This document shows, piece by piece, positions 11,121 through 28,800 of a stretch of 64,000 nucleotides of DNA. The notes beneath the pieces are model-generated. The model searched no databases, was not told the origin of the DNA, and worked only from the letters and a program-made list of their open reading frames with translations. Within the stretch, counting starts at the first letter, position 1; every line of letters begins with the position of its first letter. The stretch is from Ramazzottius varieornatus (taxonomy: Eukaryota > Animalia > Tardigrada). The stretch covers positions 124,001 to 188,000 of the forward strand of contig BDGG01000009.1 in the NCBI GenBank assembly GCA_001949185.1, given 5' to 3'. The translations under genes and the position numbers were made by a program.

Positions 11121-11985
11121 TCATGTAATACTGCAGCCGCAACAGTGGCAAACAGTCGAACTTCTGTCATGGTTTCGCCTCATGGCAAATCTGGCTGCAG
11201 TGTCAAAGATTTCCCGAACTCCTTCGCGGTGCTTGGCTGAGCATTCCATATAAGCCTTGACTTTCATGGCATCTGCTCTCGACTTGGCATACTGCGTAGT
11301 AACCGTTCGCTAAAATCCAGAAAAGACATACCATGTAGTCTCCGAGCAGATTTTGATTGACACGAAGTCTTTTCCATCTTACCGGTTTTCGCTCAAATGT
11401 TGCTTCTTCGTCCTTCCGGAGGTCTCTCTTGGTCCCTACTAATATAACAGGAACATCGGGGCAATACTCCACGACCTGCAAACAAAGTCGTCACCTCGCA
11501 CGGCCGGGTTAGCGAAATACATAAAGCAGTTCCACCAGCTACCCACTTCAGGCATCCACTTGGTAGTGGCGTTTGTGAGGCTTTGCGGGTCGTCGATTGC
11601 AAAAACCAAAAGTATGACATCGGTGTCCGGATAACTGAATGGTCGTAATTTGTCAAAGTCTTCTTGACCGGCAGTATCCCATAAATACAGCTGAATCTGC
11701 ATAATAATTCAATTACGTTTGATCACGATCCATTGCCAGCTGAGTTCCCATCATTCCAGTCGGACAGGTCCCAGTTTACAGTAAATTTATACTACATTGG
11801 AAAACAAAACTTACCTTCTCGCCGGCAACATCGACATCCGCGAGAAACGTCTCGAATACCGTCGGAATATGATCTTCGGGGAAAACATTGTTGGCGAAGA
11901 CGGAGAGTAGGCAGGTCTTCCCGCAGGCTGCGTCCCCTACCACCGTTAGTTTGTACTGTTTGACTTTCTGCACCCTTATCCCCAT
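11121..11985 (-). CDS. RhoA-like small GTPase, 4 coding exons
   Basis: [55 protein letters not shown]-terminal CAAX CSIT. Exons ~11985-11815, 11696-11547, 11475-11383, 11310-11121. Confidence 0.92.
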
Positions 11986-12346
11986 AATCTGCCGCAAAAA
12001 TTATGGAAATATCCCCGAGCTGGTCCCTTCCTAGTCCTCACATGAGTATCACTCACCGAAGACAACAAACCTTCACGTGCGCGGTGGTATCATCGGTAGC
12101 ACAAATGTTCAAGGCCGCAGCTCTCTTTGGCAGGTGTAACTACATGCAGATACCAAGTTGATAACCAAACGCGTACGTTGAAATCAAAAGCTCAGCATAA
12201 TCGGACTATCGCTTCTAAATACCATAGGATTTGGTATTCTATTGTCTTACACCGATAATTGGTCACAACGTCGTGCCGTTGCGTAACTCCAACATTTTAC
12301 ACTGCCCGCTACACATCACAGGAAGCTGGTATGCAGTACGATTCCG

Positions 12347-14568
12347 TCATAAAGGCAGACTCTTTTTCAATCGAACGCACTTCATTCCGCAAAACTCCAG
12401 GTGTTCATTCGTGGCACTAGCTGTTTCAGGAAACACCACGAAGAATCCTTTCCGAAAGTCCCATGCGCGAACTACCGAGGTCTGTAAGCAGGAAGTCACA
12501 GCTAGACACCCCGACTTGCGGCAGAGGATGAGAAGAGAAGGACTAGTGGTTCATCAGAGTTTACCATCAAGTCATCGCACATTCCAACAGCAATCTTCTG
12601 CTGAATTTGTGGTGATGGGTGGACCAGGACAAACACGGTTGCCCATTGACGTAGAAGAATGTGTAAAACTGGATCACCCCTCTTTTTCCACATCTGCCAG
12701 CGTAAGCAACTTAGTTGCATTGTGGGGTGTAAATACCGTCATGCGAGACCCATAACGAGCTCCACACTCTTATTTACAGTATAACATTGCAAAAACTCAC
12801 TTGCCATTCGTCAGCATCCGTAAATATTATCTGTTCCTCGAATGCCGCCGGCGTTTCGTAGGTAAACAGCGGAAGGGCCGAATTAGCTTGTTTCGCCAAG
12901 ACGAACTTTTCTGTGATGGCGGGAGGTACATAGCGGTTTTTTCCGACTGACAGGGCAGCAGTCTTCATTAGATCCTCTTTGAAAGACTTTGATAATGATC
13001 TGGCGGACGAATGCTCGCTATGTGAGCCGTGTTCTTCAGTTGTGACTAAGATATTGAAAGGCTCGCCCGGTCTCCAAGTTCCTAAGACCCGCCGTAGACA
13101 TTCGTAGTAAGGAAGTGCTGAACTACTCATGTCTTCAAGCTTCAGGTTGGTCCCTTCGGAGTGCACTGCACCCGGGTTTTCGTGCCACGTATCGACAGCG
13201 TGGAATAAAGGAAGCGGAACATCAATGAGCTCTTCTGGAACTGGTTCGATAGTACGGTTTAATGCTTCTATCAGGTATCGAGCGATGTTTTCCGGTGCCT
13301 CTATGTTGCCGTATCCTGCAAAAAGATCGTAAAGAAGCGTATCAGCTAGAATGAGCACCGCGTAAGGTCGAAGTTTACATTCTGGCGATGCGCTCACATT
13401 GCAAGGTGGTCGCAGAAGCGGTACACATGTTATCGCTTACTATAGAAGGCTCGGCGAAGCTAAAATAAGCCGCTTTAGCCGTGCCTAAGCCGTGGCTAAA
13501 AATATTCTAGCCACGGCCAAATATTCTTAGCCACGGCTAAAACCGCTTANNNNNNNNNNNNNNNNNNNNNNNNNNNNNNNNNNNNNNNNNNNNNNNNNNT
13601 ATTCATCGTCTNAGTACAATATATNNCCACAATTTCCACGTGCTTCCGACCGTACTCAAGGCTTCTATATCGCTTACCTATCTCGCCGCACATAGAAGCC
13701 TTGAGTACGGTCGGAAGCACGTGGAAATTGTGGCCATATATTGTACTCAGACGATGAATAGCCAAGCGTGTGTGCAATGAATTCCACATGACCGGATTCA
13801 TTGCCGGTGCAATCAGGAAAGGAAGATTGCTCTCGCCAGCCACCTTTCCAGCGTTTGTCAACATGTCGAGAATAATTTCCTGAAATTGCAGAACACATTG
13901 GCAATTACACGGCGCCCACTCGAAACGCGCATAAAACTGGCACGTCGGCCACTGAATTACAGTATACACAATCGTTACCGTGTCGCACCATTTCACTGTT
14001 GTTGGCTGAAGCTGTGCGCCACTTGAGAAAGCGATTATGTCCAACGTACTGTATTGGCCGACGTCCCCACTATATAGTTACCTACGATGTTAGACGCTAT
14101 TCCCGTTCGTTCGTCGAAAGGAGTGGTAAGACGTGCCATCATATTTGCTCCCAGGGGCGCGATAAGAACAGCAGCTATGCTTTTGATCTCGAATTCCGTA
14201 CTGTCACGGATGCTGTCTGACGGGTACTGTAACAGAAACAAATATCTTTGCAATTCGTCTGCGTGTAAGCTGAACTTACGATCACACGAAAAGACGGTTT
14301 GCTGCTTGCAACGTGAATCTCTCCATTGCTCGTCTTGGGAAGGAAGTAAGTTGCGCTGAGCGTTGGAACGAGAATAATTGAACACTGCAACAGCACCCAC
14401 ATAATCATGCGCAAATGCATCAACGCAACATCCAGTAGGTACATAACACAGACAGGTTATCCTAAAACCACTTACCTGCGGATCCAGTCTGCTAATCTCG
14501 GTTATGATGTTTGGAATTTTGATGCAGGCCACGCTTCCACTGCATCCCAGTACTACGACAGAAGCCAT
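12347..14568 (-). CDS. PPCDC: Tandem double-domain phosphopantothenoylcysteine decarboxylase (PPCDC/HAL3, HFCD flavoprotein)-like protein, ~439 aa, 7 exons
   Basis: Exons 14568-14476, 14384-14280, 14226-14086, 13879-13678, 13315-12801, 12693-12565, 12481-12347 join in phase. Motifs GCSGSVACIK, APLGAN, PAMNPVMW, MCGEIGYG, then DADEWQMWKKRGDPVLHILLRQWA and VRAWD. Intron 4 contains an N gap. Confidence 0.85.
13443..13549. repeat. Partial repeat/MITE end with TAGCCACGGC-type units, cut by assembly gap
   Basis: Repeated AGCCGTGGCTA / TAGCCACGGC units in both orientations inside PPCDC intron 4. Confidence 0.45.
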
Positions 14569-15184: not shown

Positions 15185-16261
15185 CTAGTTCCGTTTTCGT
15201 TGCTGTGCCCTATTAGGCTGCTTGAAGAGTATCTTGAACGTAATGATCCGGATATCCGTCAAGGCTAGCATGAAGAAAACCGGATCGAGTACGGTCTCCA
15301 GCAAACAAAGAATGGTGGCGACCTTGACGTAAGTAGGCCAGTTCATTTGACGAAAAAGTAATACCGTGTACAGTACGATAGATGGTATCCACGCAATGGC
15401 CATGCTGGCTGTCAGCAAACTTAGCAAAAGAAACCCGGTCGTCCGCCGTTTTATTGACTTTCTTGGTTTGTCCATTCCAGGGGCTTCCGTGGGCTTCGAA
15501 ACTGATTCCTGTACTGTGTTCGTGATGGCGTATGTTTTTCGCTGGACGGTTAACTCCATTCTTGCCATCTCCATCCTCTGAGGCGCAACCAATCTCGTTC
15601 TATAGCTAGAACATTTGTAGACAATGTACGGATATGCGCATACGATGACAGCCAAGGGTATAATATAAACGGAGACTTGCTGAGCAATGGAAAGGTCAGG
15701 CTGGGCAGCTTTATTGATGAAACACCCGAATATTTCGACAGGTCTTTGGTAGTAGACTGCGTCTAGGAGGTTATAAGGCAAGCGGAAAATTTGGACATAC
15801 AACCACACTGCCGTGCATAGGACAATGGCAGTCTTCCGCTTATGGTGAGTTCGATAAGTGACGGGACTGGCCACCGCCCAAATGCGATTGATGGTGATCA
15901 GGGCGTGAGAGCACACCATAACCCCTTGAATGGTGTTGCCATAAAGGTAAATAGAACACGCGGTCGAACCCAGCCACCAGTGTGGTCGCAGGTTGTTTAT
16001 CAGGTACAGAGGGAGCTGAAGCAAGGTCTCAATCAGAGTGGCAATTACCAAGTTGAGAACGTAGATGTTGAAAGGAGTTCTCAGATGTCGGTGGCGGGCG
16101 AATAGGTAGAGCACAAATCCGTTGGCGACGGTTGCGGCAATGAAGATAATTAGCGAAAAGACAGGAACAGCTGACCAGATTTGCAATCGCAGCGGTAAAA
16201 CAGTGGTAAAGGTGCCGTTAATATGGCTGAACGATTCGTTTTGCTGCGAACTGTTCCCCAT
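15185..16261 (-). CDS. Intronless class A (rhodopsin-like) orphan GPCR
   Basis: ~358 aa ORF, N-terminal N-glycosylation sites, 7 hydrophobic helices, TM1 ANxxV, LRTPFNIYVLNL, WWLGSTAC, NRI in place of DRY, TM6 WIP, TM7 DPVFF. Confidence 0.9.
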   Translation of the reverse strand: MGNSSQQNESFSHINGTFTTVLPLRLQIWSAVPVFSLIIFIAATVANGFVLYLFARHRHLRTPFNIYVLNLVIATLIETLLQLPLYLINNLRPHWWLGSTACSIYLYGNTIQGVMVCSHALITINRIWAVASPVTYRTHHKRKTAIVLCTAVWLYVQIFRLPYNLLDAVYYQRPVEIFGCFINKAAQPDLSIAQQVSVYIIPLAVIVCAYPYIVYKCSSYRTRLVAPQRMEMARMELTVQRKTYAITNTVQESVSKPTEAPGMDKPRKSIKRRTTGFLLLSLLTASMAIAWIPSIVLYTVLLFRQMNWPTYVKVATILCLLETVLDPVFFMLALTDIRIITFKILFKQPNRAQQRKRN

Positions 16262-18134
16262 CTTCAAAATGTCTTAAAACTGTGCCACCGTTTTAAGCTG
16301 TCTGCGCAGCATTAATACTTGTCACTGGGCACTTGAAAGAATCTAAGTCTCCAAATAAAACATCACCCCGTTACCGCCCGAGGGTTGTACGTGATTGATC
16401 TACGAAACGTCGCCGTCAAGAACCGGGAACTGACGATACGTGGTACCTCGAATGGCTGCGAGGTCAAATTCGATATAGCGGACTGGAATTTGAACACTGT
16501 CCTTCAATCAGCCAGAAATGACCGTGCAAAGACTAGTTTTTCCGTGCAATCACCGTCAGCAAAGAATAGAGCAATGACTTTCTCGGGCGACATGAAACCT
16601 CGATTAATCGGATATTAATAATGAGAATCTCGTTGAGGAACGATAAACCTGCCTGCCCTCAACGGTACGCTAACGTGAACCAAACGCATGCAACCCTCAA
16701 CAAGTGGAGAATAGCCAGGTCGTCAAAGCTACGCTGGAAGAAGGAAACCTAAGACGTGGACGGTGACGGCCAAACCATCTCCACCGAGAGCATTAAGTAG
16801 TTAATGATGCTTAATTTTTACTGTTAGAATTTGACACACATTGCTGTCGTCAGACGGGAGGAGTGCCCATTAATTGACAGCGGTTGTAGGAATGATCAAC
16901 TGTGTCCACTCTGATCTTCACACAAACACGACAGAAAGATAGAAGAGAGTTTACTCCACACACTGAGATAGACTGAATCGGCAGAACAAAATCCTGGAAG
17001 ACACCGTAGGAAGCGCAAGTGACGTCAAAATTCAGGGCGGATCATCAGTGTGATAGTAAATGAACCGATTTGATTGCCTACCGGTTGAATTCATCTTGAT
17101 TAATCCCGCTGCACTCGTGTAATGACTTGGTTTGCGGCCACCGTCAAATCAGCAGTAGCAATTATGATTGGTCGACCGGCTTTTGCGGCATATCTTACTG
17201 CAGATTCTAGACTGCGGTTCCACTATCCGTTTATTTCCAGCGTACCGGTGTCGTCTCACAGCGCGGCTCGTCAGTCTTTCAACCATGGACCACAGTAAAT
17301 AACGTCCGGGTCTGGCAGCCCAAATCAACGAAGTGGGCGTAAAAGTAACTGATACCACACCCCCTTACCGAATTTAGCGTCTGCTATCGCGCTTGATAAT
17401 TATATCCAGCAGGATCCACAAAAACTCGAAGTGGTCCTTTTCTTGAGAATGAACCATTCGTTTGGCTCAAGCAAACGTAAAACGAACGAAAGTTCCTTGT
17501 TAACTGATGTTGCCGAATAGACAAGAAAATCAGCTGAAGTTTTTTAGAGGAGCCTCGGTTTCGTCTCTTCGACCACTTGCTTCCATTGTGCTTTCTGTGT
17601 CGCTCTACGTCACGACTATGCCCCGCCCGTACAGAAAATGCGCAGAATCACCAGCGCGTACAGGCTGCGCGTATGCGCACTAGCTAGTCCTGTTCGTCGT
17701 CGTTCTGACTCTGGTGGCTGGTGGTTCGGGACATGAACAGGATCGAGAACTGTCTCGTTATCCCTTGGGGCCCTTACGTCACGAGCAGAGGTTTAAGATT
17801 AACCGTGTACGTACGTTGCACCCATAGAGCCCTCCCACCGGAAGATACAATATCGGACAACGCTACCTACTGGCCCTTCTGGTGATGACACAAACAATCT
17901 GATGATGTGTAGTACTGACCTGTCTGCCAAACACTTTGCACTAATGGGTGCATCGTGAAGTTTACGGACAAGTAATCTACGCATAATGTACAATAAGTAC
18001 AGCAAACTTGAAGCAGAAACTAAGGTTAGTTTAGAAACCGAAACCAACCGACCACAGCTAGAAAATAAGGAGCGGCAAGGACGGTCTGGCAAAGGGTACA
18101 GTAGGCACTGCCGTGGAAAGTTATTCAATCAGTT

Positions 18135-20549: not shown

Positions 20550-23500
20550 GGCCGGCCACAAGCCCGCCACGACGATGGTGAATGCTTGTCAATCACATTC
20601 AGCGCTGGACTTCACAGCACATGTCCTAGTCCTAAAATAATAATGAAAAAAGTAAACAGTCATACTTTAGCCAAGAGGAAGCTGTCGTCGATGTCAAAAA
20701 TACTACGATCAATACGGTGACAAGAAAAATGGTGAAGCCCCACAAAAAAAATAACGTTATGTTGACGCCTCCGTTACAAAGAGGTTTCTCCCTAGTGAAT
20801 TTTCTGAGTTCCAAGGTATCAAAGAGCTGGTATCACTGGCTTACTCAGTTGAGATAGGTCCACAAGTTCCATAAGATAGTCAGAATGATGATACTATGCC
20901 AAACAAACAAGTAATTTTAATTCAAGCAAAATGGACCATTTCACTAATAACAAGCTGGCATGTTCGATCGATACGAAGCGTCCCATGAGCTATGCCGGCA
21001 TGAACAGTAGTGGATCATCACGTCAAACATCACTTCAGATATGTGGCCGAGGTTCGCGCGTGGCGGCGCCTTTTCAGCGTTCTCAAGGTTCAACGTAAAA
21101 CGGTCGGTTGAAACGAGTTCACTATCGGCAAAGTGAACCACAGAAGTTCTACATCAATCGCCGTAACTTCAGCAATCGGGAATTAAACAAACGTCGGAGC
21201 TCGAAGTGGTGAAAATCGTGCTGGGTGTTGGATAATGAATGTACGCAGTTACCGACCACCGTTAGATATCAACGAGATGAAAGTCTACTTCACATTACTC
21301 CCTCGTTGGTAATGTGCTATAGATGCTTTGGGCTGGCCTCACTCATCCGCTGAATTAGATGTTATAATTACGGGTCTGGTAAGCCGTGTCTGTGTTAATC
21401 CCCACAGTGGGTGGAAAGGATAGAAGACTCGACAAAAAGATCGATCTTGACGCACACCTGCATGTATTGTGTTATGCAGGGTACACTGCCTGATCATTGC
21501 TGCGATCATACCATCCTGCAAAATCAATAGGTTTACGTACAGGGAAGAGCTTAACAAAGATACGAAGAGCCAAGCGGAAGCTGAAGGCAGAGTAAAACAA
21601 GACTCCCAGTTAACGACTGCCCGACGGCGCTGGAGGACGAACTGGGATGGTGGAAGACCTCAGTCAATGCAATATACGAAAGATGGTTCGAGCTGCGTAA
21701 TGATGTCGTCGGGACAAGGGCAAGTGTCGGTGACTTTCGGTGCTGGTGGAAGGACTCCTAACTTATATCCTGTCCTATTGTCCCGGAGGCACTCATCAGT
21801 TGTCCCGATCAATAACAACCAAGTGGGAGTGTGGACCTCCAGTCCACGCATGGTGTGTATCAGACTGCAGAGGTCGCTCAAGAGATTCTATCAGGTCTTT
21901 CAGTACGAAATTACCATTTTCCGAACGCTTATCTCGAAAAATTGTTTAGCTCTGGTCAGAAGCACTTTATCGACACCCTCTTTTTAACTGAGCATAGTGC
22001 ATGGTAATGTGTCTCGCCGGAGCATAGGGAAGCTTCACTTCAGCCTCACGATCAACCGCTGGAGCTGTTTATGTCTGGCTTAATTTTAAAAATTTGACGT
22101 TCTTGGTACATTCTTTTGTCGCCACCAGCGCCTTCAAAATTCTACGCTTGACGTAGAAACGTACAACAAGAAGAAGACTGTTGATTATTACCCGCTTCAG
22201 TTTTAACGAAACATGTATTGTTCAGAAAACTTCCACGTGAGAGAAGAGAGCTCAAAACCCTCATCTTTCTCGAAAAAATTGTCCTCTTCGCCCGGCCCGG
22301 ACAGAGCAGATTTCCCTTAACTTCACACAGTGATCGAAGACGCCTTGACACACTGACAGATAGTGTCATTGCTTGGGATTGATCAACACTACGGCAGAAG
22401 AAATGGGAAAAAGTCATCACCACATTGAACTGGCGCACGTTGTTCTCGGCAATTCACCACCTCGTTTTCAAACTTTTTTTCTTTTATAGAATCCTGAAGG
22501 ATTATTTTCTTGCTTTCTTTTCCGGCACTGATAGCCTAAAAGTACCACTACAAAATAACCCTGTTGCCGGTGTGATGGTGCAGCTGATGTTGCAGCAAAA
22601 AATTCGTAAAATGGTCCTGGTTAAATATGCATTGTAATTTTCGAAATTTTTTCTACGTCCCGTTTCAACGTTTTGAATGGATCTTTGCGAAACAACGAGA
22701 AGACCTCGTGACTGGAGTTGGACATCTACCCCACTTTGAAAGTTGTGGTACGACTTCGGAACGGGATTTTGAAATCCGGCCTTAAAAAGCGGCAGTTTCA
22801 TACTGAAAGACCTGATGATGTTGCTGTTTGCTTCCGGCTACGAGCACTGCAATAGTTTTTGAGTAAATGGGCGCCGGTGTTTCATGAATCCCTGCCACTG
22901 CGACGTAAAACTAGCGGACTTGTCCACGCGAAATCACCTGGCGAANNNNNNNNNNNNNNNNNNNNNNNNNNNNNNNNNNNNNNNNNNNNNNNNNNGACTT
23001 TACATGGACAAGCCCGCTAGTTTTCCTCGTATATATACTCACCTCATAAATGTTCACGGTCATGGTCAAAAACTAACTTATTCAATCCCGGTAAGATTCG
23101 CGTACACACTCCAAATGCCGCAAGTAACTCGAATGTTACGAAGCTCTACGTGTGCTCCACCCGAAATAAAACCGGAGACCTTCCGGGCGTTGCTCGTTCG
23201 ATCATGTGCCGATTCTTTGGAGGTGTACCAGTGAACGTTCGGAACCATGCGTACTGTGCGAATACACGATGGGGAAAACCTTTTGCTTTAACCTCCTGGA
23301 AATCCCTCCGCGTTAGTCACTCGTTCGAATCCGCAGTTCCGCAGACTATTCTCCCATTTCAAAAGGGGCAAAATTACCATAAACACAGGACGGTAATTTT
23401 GAAGTTTTTTTATTGTTTGTTCATTCGAACACAACAGAAGCGACCTGCTGCATTCACTTTTTGCTCTTTGAAAACAGAAATAACATCCAGAAGCTCGAAG

Positions 23501-25866: not shown

Positions 25867-28800
25867 TTACTTGGTCGCTGGGTGTGTCGTGGCGAGAGTT
25901 TCGGTGATGACGGCATTGTAGCTGGGAGGTGCGAAGCCGTGACTCTGATTGTACAGTTGGTTCTCGAAGGCTGTAGATGACAATGAGACAGTAAGGAAGA
26001 GTTCGGAGAAGGAAAAAGGTAAACCCATAGCTTACCGCGGTTGATCTGGCCAGATGTGTCACGATCGGGCTCGTCGATACTGGCATACTGATGGCGGGGA
26101 GCAGGTGTTTCGTACTCAATACTCTGGTAAATACTGTCACGATCGGGGTTCATGCTGGCAAAGCCCGACGAGCTGTGGCCTGCTAATGGCATGGAGACAT
26201 ATGTGTTGCGCTTAGGCTGCGCCGGCAGTGGTTCTACGAACAATTTAACCATCAACCACGGCGGACTGGCAAGTATAAAAAGCTTCGCAGTGAAGCGGGA
26301 CGTCGGCAGACAAGCTCGACAAGATCGTTTTTGAAAGCCGCGCACGTTCAGGGTGATGTTGGCTGGAACGTGCGCCACTTGGCAAAACAAATCTGAAAAG
26401 ACCAGTTTTCCAAGTGGCGCACGTTACCAGTCAATGATACTGAAATCGAGCGCTACTTACAAGGGAACGGAGGTGACCATGAGAGTCTGAACTTCTTCCA
26501 ACTTTTTCTGTCGAAAGTACTCGGTCCTAGCTACCGTTCAAGGGTACTCTCAGTTGCCACCGAGCACCTTTTGGCTAGGGAGCAAATTTCGAATGCGTGG
26601 AACCCTCTCAAAACCACTGTGGGACCTCTGACTTCTCGACGTCTACTGGTTCTCGTATCGTCCGAAACATAACTTCTCCAGCAACAAAACTGCACTATAT
26701 GAACTGGTGAACACTTCTACTGTTTCAGATTAGCGAAACAAAAATTTTCGTTTTCTTCAACTTTCCATCGANNNNNNNNNNNNNNNNNNNNNNNNNNNNN
26801 NNNNNNNNNNNNNNNNNNNNNAAAACGAAAATTTCTGTTTCGCTAATCTGACAGCAGAAGTGTTCCCCAGTTCATATAGTGCAGTTTTGTTGCTGGAGAA
26901 GTTATGTTTCGGACGATACGAGAACCAGTAGACGTCGAGAAGTCAGAGGTCCCACAGTGGTTTTGAGAGGGTTCCACGCATTCGAAATTTGCTCCCTAGC
27001 CAAAAGGTGCTCGGTGGCAACTGAGAGTACCCTTGAACGGTAGCTAGGACCGAGTACTTTCGACAGAAAAAGTTGGAAGAAGTTCAGACTCTCATGGTCA
27101 CCTCCGTTCCCTTGTTAGAACAGTATCTTGTCCAGTATTCCCTGCTTTTTTTACACAAAACTTCGTGGTGGTTTGAGCCCGGTCTGAGTATTTTGTAGAA
27201 AAAGGACAGGGGTAACAGATACGGCGAGCAAAACTCTTTTGCTTTCCGTAGTCTGATACTTACCGGCCAACTTGACGAAGGCTTCGCCATTCTTCAGGTG
27301 AACCGCCGTGGTCTTGGCAGTGTCCAGCGTCTTCAGGCTATACTCGCCACCATCGGAACTGGACAAGTCCAAGGAAGAAGAGTAGGTGACATTGGCCAGT
27401 TCTTGTTGCAACTTCGCTAGACGACGACGGTAGAAGAGAGCCAGCGCCAGAATGAGCAGGATGACGATGATGGTCATGCACAGTCCAACAATCAGACCGG
27501 TATTGTCCGACTTGCTGACCGCTACCTGGCTTCTGATGAAGTCAGCTCGGTTGGCACTGTCATCCAACGCCAGACTAGAGCGACACTCGGGCCCGCTGTA
27601 GTGTGGTAGACAGACACAGCCGTTGAGCTCCACGCCACACAAGAACTTTTCCTGTTGGCAGGAAGACCCGCAGTCGCGGAAGCACTGTTCGTCGCCGCCG
27701 TTGAGCAGGCAGCACAGACAACAGGAAGGTCCGGCTTGGTTTCGCCAACCCAATCGACAGCTACAGGAGCCATCTAGCGGGTGGCAGACCGTCAAGTTGC
27801 TGCACTGGCAAGTACTACCGCAGGTGGGAGGAGAGCCGTACTTGCCATCGGGACAAGCTACAAAAACAACAAAAGGTAAAAACGAACCCATATAAATGAA
27901 GAAAAATATAGAGACACCAAAAAAGTATCAAAACATATCTGAGACGTGAGCAAACGAACTAAACCAGACTATCTTCCCAAGTAGCGCATGTTTACGGTGT
28001 CATAAGCTGCAAGCATGCGCCGCTGGGGAGAACGATCTGGTTTCCATCAAAAAAGGTTATAATACTAGAAGAAAATTAATATATAAAAGAAATAAAATCA
28101 GCGTTATTACACGAAAGTTTATCGAGAAAGTAAGAGTCAGCTACATTGCGCTGTCCACGCCCCACCGAACAACAATAACAGCTTTTTCACGGAAACATCA
28201 TGATTATGCATATAACGCCATGTATAGCATTCTCTAAACAGGTTTATGAGCAACAAGGTGCGCCAGGTCAGGCCTGTCCGTCATCATCGTTATTCAATAA
28301 AGCCAACATGACTTACCTCGTTCCTGACAACGTTGGCCCGAGTAGCCTTTGAAACAATGGCATTGACCCGTAACGGGATGGCACGTTTGGGCATTCTCGC
28401 ACTGGCAGTCCTGTTGACAGTCCTGGCCGAACTTGCCGGGTTCACACTGCATCTCGCATTGGGCTCCCCAGTAGCCGGCTGGACACTTGCAGACACCGGA
28501 AGCGCCGTCACACTTGCCTTTATTGTAACAGACTTTGCAGGCTTTGCTACAGTTCCTGCCCCAGAAACCTTCGGCACAATCATTCTCACAGGTCTCGCCC
28601 TGCAAAGAAAGCAAACAAGTCGTCAGGAATCAATCACCAGCAGAAGAACACCTCGTTCAGTATCCATGTCGATATGGGAACTCAGTAAACGAAGTTTTTC
28701 TGAGTTCTTCTGAGTGGCGCAAGTTACCATTGCCACCGGCTGACAGCGTGCGCCACTTGAAAAACGGTCTCGTCGAGTTTTGTTTCCCCAAGTGGCGCAT

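What the first reader, a model, noticed from the sequence alone, without database searches (positions are those of the whole stretch)
12347..14568. Single-chain split PPCDC: two fused, reciprocally degenerate domains that should complement each other
Seen: the spliced product is ~439 aa, about twice a normal PPCDC. Domain 1 has the FMN-binding GCSGSVACIK, APLGAN, PAMNPVMW and the catalytic-Cys motif MCGEIGYG. Its DEW...LHIxLRRWA segment is replaced by YPSDSIRDSTEFEIKSI, with no His. Domain 2 has a near-perfect FTDADEWQMWKKRGDPVLHILLRQWA..IAVGMCDDLMTSVVRAWD but lacks GSVA, PAMN and CGDxG. The end of domain 1 and start of domain 2 lie in one uninterrupted exon (13315-12801), so the fusion is not caused by the nearby gap. 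Established: PPCDC/HAL3 active sites form between adjacent protomers, with His from one and Cys from the other; in budding yeast Cab3 supplies the Cys and Hal3/Vhs3 the His. Inference: internal duplication and subfunctionalisation produced a covalent Cys-donor/His-donor pair, convergent with yeast. It could be an active monomer with one intramolecular site, freeing the degenerate faces for moonlighting (Hal3 inhibits Ppz1). I know of no description of this architecture in animals.
Basis: partly seen in the sequence, partly recalled or inferred. Interest (0 to 1): 0.88.

Follow-up and report, generated by a model that had tools for sequence, protein, structure and literature searches.

The report
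Two-domain split PPCDC in a tardigrade
The only coenzyme-A decarboxylase (PPCDC) gene of the tardigrade Ramazzottius varieornatus encodes two fused copies of the enzyme domain. Each copy has lost the catalytic parts that the other keeps, so the two probably build one shared active site, as two separate proteins do in baker's yeast.

Summary
The window is Ramazzottius varieornatus, and the gene is RvY_13453 (GenBank GAV02952.1, 428 aa, named only 'Flavoprotein domain-containing protein').

- **Gene model:** seven minus-strand exons with GT..AG introns give 1320 nt, or 439 aa. The deposited model has the same exons 2-7 but omits exon 1, which carries GSVA.
- **Gap:** it lies inside intron 4. The family alignment runs across that junction without an indel, and an invariant Gly is the codon split by the intron. 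The fusion itself is in one uninterrupted exon.
- **Reciprocal loss:** 66 columns are conserved in 84 canonical PPCDCs. Domain 1 keeps 30 of them (GSVA, APLxAN, PAMNxxMW, CGxxGxG). Domain 2 keeps 23 (DxDEW, the His loop, GxCDxL, RAWD). Only 2 are kept by both.
- **Single copy:** a whole-genome profile search finds no other PPCDC. PanK, a PPCS-like locus and DPCK are present.
- **Relative:** one unnamed sequence (ENA contig) has the same fused exon at 46% identity.
- **Complex model:** it places the FMN/Asn/Cys face of domain 1 against the His/RAWD face of domain 2 (0.71; best control 0.00). This may be recalled from solved trimers.

I rate it a new variant of a known kind.

The parts
14476..14568 (-). 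Exon 1 (31 aa). It starts at ATG 14568 and holds strand beta-1 and the FMN-phosphate motif G-S-V-A (14527-14538) of domain 1. It is absent from the deposited model GAV02952.1.
   Evidence: Scores 25.3 bits against a profile of 84 canonical PPCDCs. The whole-genome profile search hits it at E 0.0036. The donor is GTAAGT, phase 0.
14280..14384 (-). Exon 2 (35 aa): the beta-2 region of domain 1.
   Evidence: Present in the deposited protein P0006 as residues 21-55. AG/GT boundaries.
14086..14226 (-). Exon 3 (47 aa). A degenerate stretch replaces the DEW...His loop (no His in the aligned position). It is followed by IAPLGAN and a diverged helix (GIASNI).
   Evidence: Profile columns 74-97 are empty in domain 1, while columns 101-110 are kept. 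The exon 3/4 junction ...ASNI|EIIL... is the one used in P0001 and P0006.
13678..13879 (-). Exon 4 (67 codons plus 1 nt). It holds APAMNPVMW (Asn codon 13796-13798) and K..MCGEI (Cys codon 13688-13690).
   Evidence: Phmmer alignment to AtHAL3a 130-177 and human PPCDC 126-177. Scores 37.3 bits against the local profile.
13316..13677 (-). Intron 4. It contains the assembly gap (13550-13599), an inverted copy of the end of exon 4 with Ns (13600-13668 against 13692-13760), and short palindromes at 13466-13549.
   Evidence: The family alignment is continuous across the junction, and the invariant Gly is the split codon.
12801..13315 (-). Exon 5 (2 nt plus 171 codons), the fusion exon. It holds the C-terminal helix of domain 1 (to about 13254), a linker of about 60 aa (about 13253-13071), then beta-1 to beta-3 of domain 2 with a degenerate GSVA site, ending in FTDADEWQ.
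   Evidence: It is one open frame. An orthologous open exon occurs in another organism (P0002): 46% identity over 171 aa by BLASTP, E 5e-42 for that single comparison; 49% identity and E 1.8e-29 against the whole library by phmmer.
12565..12693 (-). Exon 6 (43 aa). It holds the His loop of domain 2 (His codon 12661-12663), a degenerate APLxAN site (HPSPQI), and GMCDDLM.
   Evidence: AtHAL3a 81-122 at E 9e-9 and human PPCDC 80-122. Scores 42.9 bits against the local profile.
12347..12481 (-). Exon 7 (44 aa plus stop). It holds TSVVRAWD, beta-5, and a degenerate PAMN site (FPETASAT). It ends just before the point where the Cys loop would begin.
   Evidence: The domain-2 model, residues 252-422, aligns to human PPCDC 14-165. 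No PPCDC-like remnant is found in the 3' UTR or in any intron.

Best explanation
RvY_13453 is the single PPCDC gene of Ramazzottius varieornatus, coding for the third step of CoA synthesis. An internal duplication of the flavoprotein (HFCD) domain was followed by reciprocal loss of catalytic elements.

- **Domain 1** (exons 1 to early exon 5) keeps the loops around its own FMN (GSVA, APLxAN, PAMNxxMW with the Asn) and the Cys clamp. It has lost the His loop and the RAWD segment.
- **Domain 2** (exon 5 to exon 7) is a full Rossmann-like domain truncated before the Cys loop. It keeps the DEW/His loop, GxCDxL and RAWD. It has lost every FMN, Asn and Cys element.

Canonical PPCDC active sites lie between neighbouring protomers, with His from one and Asn/Cys from the other. 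So domain 2 most likely presents its His to the FMN site of domain 1, giving one competent composite site per polypeptide. That would be a covalent counterpart of the yeast Cab3-Hal3/Vhs3 pair.

**Shown:** the sequence architecture, the residue partition, single-copy status, and conservation of the fusion exon in one relative.

**Inferred:** the catalytic complementation, whether the pairing is within a chain or between chains, and the oligomeric state.
For: - **Identity of the gene:**
- **Exon model:** 1320 nt, all introns GT..AG.
- **Family match:** Pfam PF02441 scores 35.5 bits (cut-off 22.7) in two stretches. The local profile places domain 1 at P0006 residues 74-190 (57.7 bits) and domain 2 at 326-399 (94.0 bits), with exon 1 at 25.3 bits.
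- **Partition:** of 66 columns conserved at 80% or more, domain 1 keeps 30, domain 2 keeps 23, both keep 2, and together they keep 51. About 10 shared columns would be expected by chance; hypergeometric P is 7e-6, though the columns are clustered and not independent.
- **Catalytic positions:** His aligns to AtHAL3a His90. Asn and Cys align to Asn142 and Cys175.
- **Domain 2 fold:** pLDDT is 91-95 over residues 331-400. Against 1qzu_A, Z is 14.2, rmsd 2.6 A, with 140 residues aligned and model 252-422 matching chain 14-165.
- **Both domains:** the ESM Atlas's own model (pTM 0.72) matches flavoprotein folds with residues 1-192 and with 252-428.
- **Complex:**
  - ipSAE is 0.71; the best of 3 controls is 0.00.
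  - That mark was reached by 51 of 78 solved complexes and 2 of 108 mismatched pairs. On eukaryotes it was reached by 39 of 65 solved pairs and 2 of 126 unrelated pairs.
  - The runs agree in at least 67% of contacts, and the partner's pLDDT is at least 58.
  - Interface: A82, N83, A86, N130, M133, C166 of domain 1 against W340, I353, R356, K374, G378-D381 and R389-D392 of domain 2. These are the family residues each domain retains.
- **Single copy:** no other PPCDC locus in 55.8 Mb.
- **Pathway:** PanK, a PPCS-like locus and DPCK are present.
- **Relative:** P0002 keeps the fused exon open, with the same degenerate GSVA site and a retained (D/N)EW motif.
- **Yeast rule:** PMC9604783.
Against:
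- The deposited isoform 1 starts inside intron 1 and lacks exon 1. Without exon 1, domain 1 has no GSVA.
- The complex model was run without exon 1 and without alignments. Because PPCDC trimers are solved, its pass may be recall of that interface rather than evidence that these copies bind.
- AlphaFold2 did not model domain 1, because all homologues aligned to domain 2.
- In yeast, Hal3 itself binds FMN and Cab3 alone does not (PMC6168597). My assignment of FMN to the Asn/Cys protomer therefore rests on fold logic, not on a test.
- Two domains cannot close a C3 trimer on their own.
- Only one relative is known, a 1-kb contig of unnamed origin.
- No annotated two-domain orthologue was found among proteins of 235-749 aa.
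Confidence: 0.6

Rival explanations
1. The protein is not a complementing pair. Either domain 1 works, perhaps poorly, without the canonical His, or the whole protein has lost PPCDC activity. In the second case the animal would rely on salvaged 4'-phosphopantetheine, and domain 2 would be a structural or regulatory appendage with a new role.
For: - Domain 1 lacks the His loop and RAWD, and domain 2 lacks all FMN, Asn and Cys elements.
- Domain 1 is so diverged that P0001 finds no homologue in 5.8 billion proteins at E 0.001.
- Uptake of 4'-phosphopantetheine by animal cells has been reported (from my own knowledge, not checked here).
Against: - The His loop of domain 2 is the best conserved part of the protein (94 bits over 75 residues). 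That is hard to explain unless its catalytic or interface role is retained.
- The near-exclusive partition (2 shared columns of 66) is what complementation predicts. Independent decay does not predict it.
- The flanking pathway genes are present.
- The retained residues meet each other in the complex model.
Confidence: 0.2
2. The gene model or assembly is an artefact, or the gene is decaying. The real transcripts would stop after domain 1, start after exon 1, or not cross the gap. In that case the 439-aa protein is not made.
For: - There is a gap with an inverted, N-containing copy of exon 4 sequence in intron 4.
- Deposited isoform 1 starts in intron 1, and isoform 2 is a 256-aa fragment.
- No reads could be examined.
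Against: - The fusion lies within one open exon that is also open in another organism.
- The family alignment crosses the exon 4/5 junction without an indel, and the split codon gives an invariant Gly.
- Both deposited proteins cross that junction. The models were built partly from RNA-seq with Cufflinks (PMC5034306), and two numbered isoforms suggest a transcript-based origin (my inference).
- All seven exons are open with canonical splice sites.
- Exon 1 keeps a perfect GSGSVA motif.
- No other locus could supply the missing halves.
Confidence: 0.1
3. Two adjacent PPCDC paralogue genes have been wrongly joined by scaffolding.
For: A gap lies between exons 4 and 5 (scan program note).
Against: - Exon 5 itself starts with the C-terminal helix of a PPCDC domain, which continues domain 1 exactly. 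It then runs in frame into domain 2.
- No further PPCDC exons exist anywhere in the genome, or in the introns or flanks.
Confidence: 0.03

Closest known systems
Canonical eukaryotic PPCDC (human PPCDC/COAC, PDB 1QZU; Arabidopsis AtHAL3a, PDB 1E20, 1MVL, 1MVN)
   Same: - Same family (PF02441) and same fold.
- Same catalytic residues: the equivalents of His90, Asn142, Met145 and Cys175 are all present somewhere in the polypeptide.
   Different: - Canonical enzymes are about 200-aa single domains forming homotrimers with three identical sites.
- Here there are two domains in about 439 aa, neither self-sufficient, and at most one complete site per chain.
Saccharomyces cerevisiae heteromeric PPCDC (Cab3 with Hal3 and/or Vhs3)
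   Same: The division of labour is the same. One protomer type gives Cys plus PXMNXXMW (Cab3, matching domain 1) and the other gives the essential His (Hal3/Vhs3, matching domain 2). The result is a single functional site at their interface (PMC9604783).
   Different: - In yeast these are separate genes and polypeptides that assemble into a heterotrimer. The subunits have long N-terminal extensions and acidic tails, and Hal3/Vhs3 also inhibit the fungal phosphatase Ppz1.
- Hal3, Vhs3 and Cab3 all keep the conserved His (PMC9604783), and Hal3 itself binds FMN (PMC6168597).
- Here the two halves are covalently fused and the degeneration is deeper on both sides: domain 1 has no His, and domain 2 has no FMN motifs.
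- The origin is independent, in an animal.
Other PPCDC fusion proteins (bacterial CoaBC/Dfp; S. pombe Hal3-thymidylate synthase, P0098; nematode PPCDC-ChaC models P0010, P0011, P0019)
   Same: A PPCDC domain forms part of a longer multidomain polypeptide.
   Different: In those proteins a complete PPCDC domain is joined to an unrelated enzyme. None has two PPCDC domains with reciprocal losses.

Membership tests
PPCDC / HFCD flavoprotein family (Pfam PF02441) | Significant match to the family profile | tested here: met
   P0006 scores 35.5 bits against a cut-off of 22.7, in two stretches. The local canonical-PPCDC profile gives 57.7 bits for domain 1 and 94.0 bits for domain 2.
PPCDC / HFCD flavoprotein family (Pfam PF02441) | Rossmann-like HFCD fold | tested here: met
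   The domain 2 model matches 1qzu_A at Z 14.2, rmsd 2.6 A, 140 aligned, and Foldseek gives E 4.5e-9 to 1mvn. Support for domain 1 is weaker: the Atlas model, residues 1-192, matches a CoaBC flavoprotein at TM 0.36, and my AF2 run did not model it.
PPCDC / HFCD flavoprotein family (Pfam PF02441) | FMN-binding loops (G-S-[VI]-A after beta-1; APL[SD]AN after beta-4) | tested here: met
   Met in domain 1 only, with GSVA in exon 1 and APLGAN in exon 3. Domain 2 has TTEEHGS and HPSPQI at these places.
PPCDC / HFCD flavoprotein family (Pfam PF02441) | Catalytic His (AtHAL3a His90) in the DEW...PVLHIxLRxWA loop | tested here: met
   Met in domain 2 only: His352 of P0006, codon 12661-12663. In domain 1 the loop is deleted or replaced.
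PPCDC / HFCD flavoprotein family (Pfam PF02441) | PXMNXXMW motif (Asn142, Met145) and redox Cys (Cys175) in CGxxGxG | tested here: met
   Met in domain 1 only: N130, M133 and C166 of P0006. Domain 2 has FPETASAT and stops before the Cys loop.
PPCDC / HFCD flavoprotein family (Pfam PF02441) | All catalytic elements in one domain, with a homotrimer of identical protomers | tested here: not met
   No single domain carries His together with Asn and Cys. The oligomeric state itself cannot be tested here.
PPCDC / HFCD flavoprotein family (Pfam PF02441) | FMN binding and decarboxylation of 4'-phosphopantothenoylcysteine | not testable with these tools
   This needs a biochemical assay or genetic complementation.
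Yeast-type split PPCDC (Cab3 + Hal3/Vhs3) | His donor and Cys/Asn donor are different protomer units that form one composite site | tested here: met
   At sequence level the conserved residues partition 30/23 with 2 shared. In the model, the Asn/Cys/FMN-loop face of domain 1 contacts the His-loop/RAWD face of domain 2 (0.71 against the best control 0.00; that mark was reached by 51 of 78 solved complexes and 2 of 108 mismatched pairs). This is computational only.
Yeast-type split PPCDC (Cab3 + Hal3/Vhs3) | Separate polypeptides from paralogous genes; Hal3-type N-terminal extension and acidic tail; Ppz1 inhibition | tested here: not met
   Here there is a single gene and a single chain, and no second locus. 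No acidic tail is present; the protein ends ...KKSLPL. Ppz1 inhibition was not tested, and Ppz is described as fungus-specific (abstracts listed).

The most novel reading that the evidence does not exclude
An animal PPCDC has given up the universal C3 homotrimer. Instead it is an obligate pseudo-heterodimer within a single chain, with exactly one composite active site. It would have arisen by internal duplication and reciprocal loss, independently of the yeast Cab3/Hal3 system, and would be old enough to be shared by at least two tardigrade lineages. The two dead faces would then be free to evolve new contacts.
Probability: 0.4. Interest if true: 0.75.

Novelty: new variant of a known kind. 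Interest (0 to 1): 0.68.

Why it matters
PPCDC is an essential, near-universal enzyme whose active site is shared between identical protomers. The yeast Cab3/Hal3/Vhs3 heterotrimer is the one described case I found where that symmetry was broken by gene duplication and reciprocal loss.

A second, independent case in an animal, with the two halves fused in one chain, would be a clean natural example of subfunctionalisation acting on an interface active site. It would show how homo-oligomeric enzymes can become pseudo-heteromers.

The constructs for testing it are ready-made: full length, each domain alone, His-to-Ala in domain 2, and Cys-to-Ser in domain 1.

It also corrects the public model of RvY_13453, which lacks the FMN-binding first exon.

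Tried and rejected
1. This happened once on a stretch containing the N run and once on an N-free stretch. I stopped there, so read laying could not be used and there is no RNA or DNA read evidence.
2. **Contig look-up.** The contig and organism of P0002 could not be examined.
3. **Pfam genome search.** PF02441 searched over the whole genome gave no candidate, not even this gene. The search is too insensitive for short exons. It was replaced by an alignment profile, which found exons 1, 4, 6 and 7 of this locus only.
4. **Homologue searches.**
   - With P0006, the search for homologous proteins returned only single-domain PPCDCs covering 14-34% of the query.
   - With P0001, it returned only P0001 itself.
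   - With the exon-6 ORF, no candidate was found.
5. **AlphaFold2.** With alignment A2, all 59 homologues aligned to domain 2. Domain 1 was therefore folded without information and came out as low-confidence helices. That part of the model says nothing about the domain 1 fold.
6. **Direct comparison of the domains.** BLASTP of domain 1 against domain 2 gives no significant match. They are related only through the family profile.
7. **Hidden exons.** I looked for PPCDC-like remnants in the introns, the 5' flank and the 3' UTR. All scores were negative.
8. **Literature and earlier notes.**
   - The supplement and full-text searches for RvY_13453 found nothing.
   - Earlier notes of this scan held nothing on this gene.
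9. **Joined model left out.** Exons were searched one by one by reference. Whole-protein analyses used the deposited 428-aa protein P0006, which lacks exon 1 and carries 20 spurious N-terminal residues.
Full report
**What and where.** The window is part of scaffold C9 of a 55.8-Mb, 200-contig assembly. Exact-sequence look-up identifies the gene as RvY_13453 of the tardigrade Ramazzottius varieornatus. It has two deposited products:
- GAV02952.1 (428 aa, P0006; UniRef name 'Flavoprotein domain-containing protein').
- GAV02953.1 (256 aa, P0001), a fragment.

No paper in the searchable library mentions this gene, a tardigrade PPCDC, or a tandem or duplicated PPCDC.

**Checking the observation.**

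*Exon model.* Reading the minus strand and checking boundaries by script gives seven exons:
- exon 1: 14568-14476
- exon 2: 14384-14280
- exon 3: 14226-14086
- exon 4: 13879-13678
- exon 5: 13315-12801
- exon 6: 12693-12565
- exon 7: 12481-12347

*Deposited model.* The deposited 428-aa model uses the same exons 2-7 and the same junctions. It starts, however, at an ATG inside intron 1 (14444), so it lacks exon 1. Exon 1 carries GCSGSVACIK. It scores 25.3 bits against a profile of 84 canonical PPCDCs and is picked up by a whole-genome profile search.

- Exon 6 aligns to AtHAL3a 81-122 and human PPCDC 80-122, with the His at the position of His90.
- Exon 4 aligns to AtHAL3a 130-177, with Asn and Cys at the positions of Asn142 and Cys175.

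**The gap.**
- The 50-N run (13550-13599) lies inside intron 4.
- Next to it is a 69-nt, 96%-complementary inverted copy of the last part of exon 4. It contains three Ns (13600-13668 against 13692-13760).
- The Cys codon and the splice donor sit in the 23-nt spacer between the arms. This looks like a fold-back artefact at a contig end, although it could be real.
- The other two gaps in the window also sit at inverted repeats.

Continuity across the gap is supported in four ways:
- The family profile aligns ...K.SMCGEIG|YGNIEAPENI... without any indel.
- The family-invariant Gly of CGxxGxG is the codon split by this intron.
- Both deposited proteins read across the junction.
- No other PPCDC exon exists elsewhere in the genome, in the introns, or in the flanks.

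The fusion itself does not depend on the gap. The C-terminal helix of domain 1, the linker and the N-terminal half of domain 2 all lie in the single open exon 5.

**Two domains.**
- Pfam PF02441 matches P0006 above its cut-off in two stretches.
- The local profile gives domain 1 as residues 74-190 (57.7 bits, profile positions 136-239), plus exons 1-2. It gives domain 2 as residues 326-399 (94.0 bits, positions 101-175).
- In the AlphaFold2 model, domain 2 is a five-stranded alpha/beta domain, with pLDDT 91-95 over residues 331-400.
- Model residues 252-422 superpose on human PPCDC residues 14-165 (Z 14.2, rmsd 2.6 A, 140 aligned). Foldseek gives E 4.5e-9 to 1mvn.
- Domain 2 is thus a whole HFCD domain cut off just before the Cys loop.
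- Domain 1 could not be modelled in that run, because MAFFT aligned all homologues to domain 2.
- The ESM Atlas's own model of this protein (pTM 0.72) matches flavoprotein folds with residues 1-192 and again with 252-428.

**Reciprocal degeneration.** I counted the columns conserved at 80% or more in 84 canonical PPCDCs; there are 66.
- Domain 1 keeps 30: G-S-V-A..K, IAPL.AN..A, APAMN.MW..T, and K.CG.G.G.
- Domain 2 keeps 23: D.DEW, RGD..LHI.LR.WA, and K...G..D.L...V.RAW-D.
- Only two columns are kept by both, and together the domains keep 51.
- Independent loss would give about ten shared columns. The hypergeometric P is 7e-6, but the columns are clustered, so this figure is descriptive only.

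Domain 1 has also lost GxCDNLL...RAWD, and domain 2 has also lost APLxAN.

One further point hints at a DNA-level duplication. The phase-0 intron after GIASNI in domain 1 and the phase-0 intron after GMCDDLM in domain 2 fall within one residue of each other in the family alignment. This is suggestive only.

**Is it the working PPCDC?**
- A 30-sequence profile searched over the whole genome finds exons 6, 4, 1 and 7 of this locus and nothing else.
- A crustacean PPCDC as query gives the same result.
- The bacterial coaBC model finds only a PPCS-like locus.
- Pantothenate kinase (224 and 148 bits over two adjacent pieces), a PPCS-like exon (22.9 bits, just at the cut-off) and two DPCK loci are present. 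The pathway around this step therefore exists.
- An exhaustive HMMER search of 1.84 billion cluster representatives with exon 5 found only the gene itself and one relative, P0002 (180 aa, from a 1007-bp ENA contig of unnamed origin; E 1.8e-29).
- P0002 is an open reading frame covering the same exon at 46% identity. It has the C-terminal helix of domain 1, the linker, the same degenerate GSVA site (ILVGTEETDSGNE), and FTDQNEWQ, after which it runs into intron-like sequence.
- So the fusion, and at least part of the degeneration, predate the split of two species, and the frame has been kept open.

**Mechanism.**

*Established for the family* (PMC9604783; PMC6168597):
- Sites lie at protomer interfaces.
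- His90, Asn142 and Met145 act in the oxidative decarboxylation, and Cys175 acts in the reduction.
- In yeast, the single working site forms between Cab3 (Cys plus PXMNXXMW) and Hal3 or Vhs3 (His).

*The tardigrade protein* fits this as domain 1 = Cab3-like and domain 2 = Hal3-like, covalently linked.

*My inference from the fold.* The GSVA, APLxAN and PAMN loops follow neighbouring strands of one sheet, so they surround the same FMN. Domain 1 would then own the flavin, the Asn and the Cys, and would need only the His loop and helix of its neighbour.

*A computational test agrees.* I submitted domain 1 (residues 21-215, without exon 1), FMN, and domain 2 (230-428).
- The score is 0.71 against a best control of 0.00.
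- That mark was reached by 51 of 78 solved complexes and 2 of 108 mismatched pairs. On eukaryotes it was reached by 39 of 65 solved pairs and 2 of 126 unrelated pairs.
- The runs agree in at least 67% of contacts, and the partner's pLDDT is at least 58.
- The confident contacts join A82, N83, A86, N130, M133 and C166 of domain 1 with W340, I353, R356, K374, G378-D381 and R389-D392 of domain 2. These are the residues each domain has retained, in the orientation the hypothesis predicts rather than the reverse.

*Caveats.*
- The calibration held no ligand.
- Solved PPCDC trimers may be remembered by the model.
- Exon 1 was missing from the domain 1 chain.
- A pass supports likeness to the known interface; it does not show binding.

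**What remains open.**
- Transcript structure was not tested.
- The deposited models were built by merging Cufflinks RNA-seq models with ab initio ones (PMC5034306). The two numbered isoforms suggest transcript support for junctions 2-3 to 6-7. That is my inference, and it does not cover exon 1.
- Nothing here tests whether the pairing is within one chain or between chains, what closes or replaces the trimer, whether FMN is bound, or whether the dead faces do anything else.

- Exons were searched singly by reference, and whole-protein work used the deposited P0006.

**Verdict.** It is not yet supported by transcripts or biochemistry. The gene is in public databases but uncharacterised, and I found no description of this architecture. 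I class it as a new variant of a known kind, with interest 0.68.

Noticed in passing
window 14385-14475 (intron 1) and 14444: The deposited model GAV02952.1 starts at an ATG inside intron 1. It replaces exon 1 (GCSGSVA) with 20 residues of intron-derived sequence, so the public annotation lacks the FMN-binding N-terminus.
   Followed up: yes
window 13600-13668 against 13692-13760: A 69-nt inverted copy of the 3' part of exon 4, 96% complementary and containing Ns, abuts the gap. The Cys codon and the 5' splice site lie in the 23-nt spacer. This is probably a fold-back assembly artefact. If real, it would form a pre-mRNA hairpin presenting the donor site in its loop.
   Followed up: partly
window 22907-23024 and 26520-27054: The other two 50-N gaps in the window also sit at the centre of inverted repeats. 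One has 29-nt arms. The other has 204-nt arms at 99% plus 30-nt arms. Gaps in this assembly seem to mark palindromic sequence.
   Followed up: partly
window 13466-13549: Nested short palindromes and direct repeats built on TAGCCACGGC/GCCGTGGCTA lie in intron 4, on the low-coordinate side of the gap.
   Followed up: no
window 14035-14568 (-): An unspliced reading from the exon 1 ATG stays open for 177 codons through intron 1, exon 2 (out of frame) and intron 2, and comes back into frame in exon 3. The two introns are 91 and 53 nt, which together make 144, a multiple of 3. This is probably coincidence.
   Followed up: no
window 15185-16267 (-) and 11779-11997 (-): The neighbours are an intron-free rhodopsin-family GPCR ORF (PF00001, 93 bits) upstream and the first exon of a Ras/Rho-type small GTPase downstream. 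About 350 nt separate the PPCDC stop codon from the first listed start of the GTPase reading frame.
   Followed up: partly
proteins P0010, P0011, P0019, P0062 (nematodes): Several plant-parasitic and filarial nematode models join a complete PPCDC domain to a ChaC (PF04752) domain. This is either a real fusion or merged neighbouring genes.
   Followed up: no
proteins P0105, P0122 (ENA, unnamed): Two PPCDC-like proteins of about 460 aa have an extra N-terminal piece matching only the first third of the domain, followed by a large insert. This is a different pattern from the one studied here.
   Followed up: no
L011 / L016 / L017 (G000:C19:58558-63977): The only PPCS-like locus (PF04127/CoaB) in the genome matches weakly: 22.9 bits, just at the cut-off, with 19.3 and 16.9 bits to the coaBC model. 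The step before PPCDC may also be diverged in this animal.
   Followed up: no
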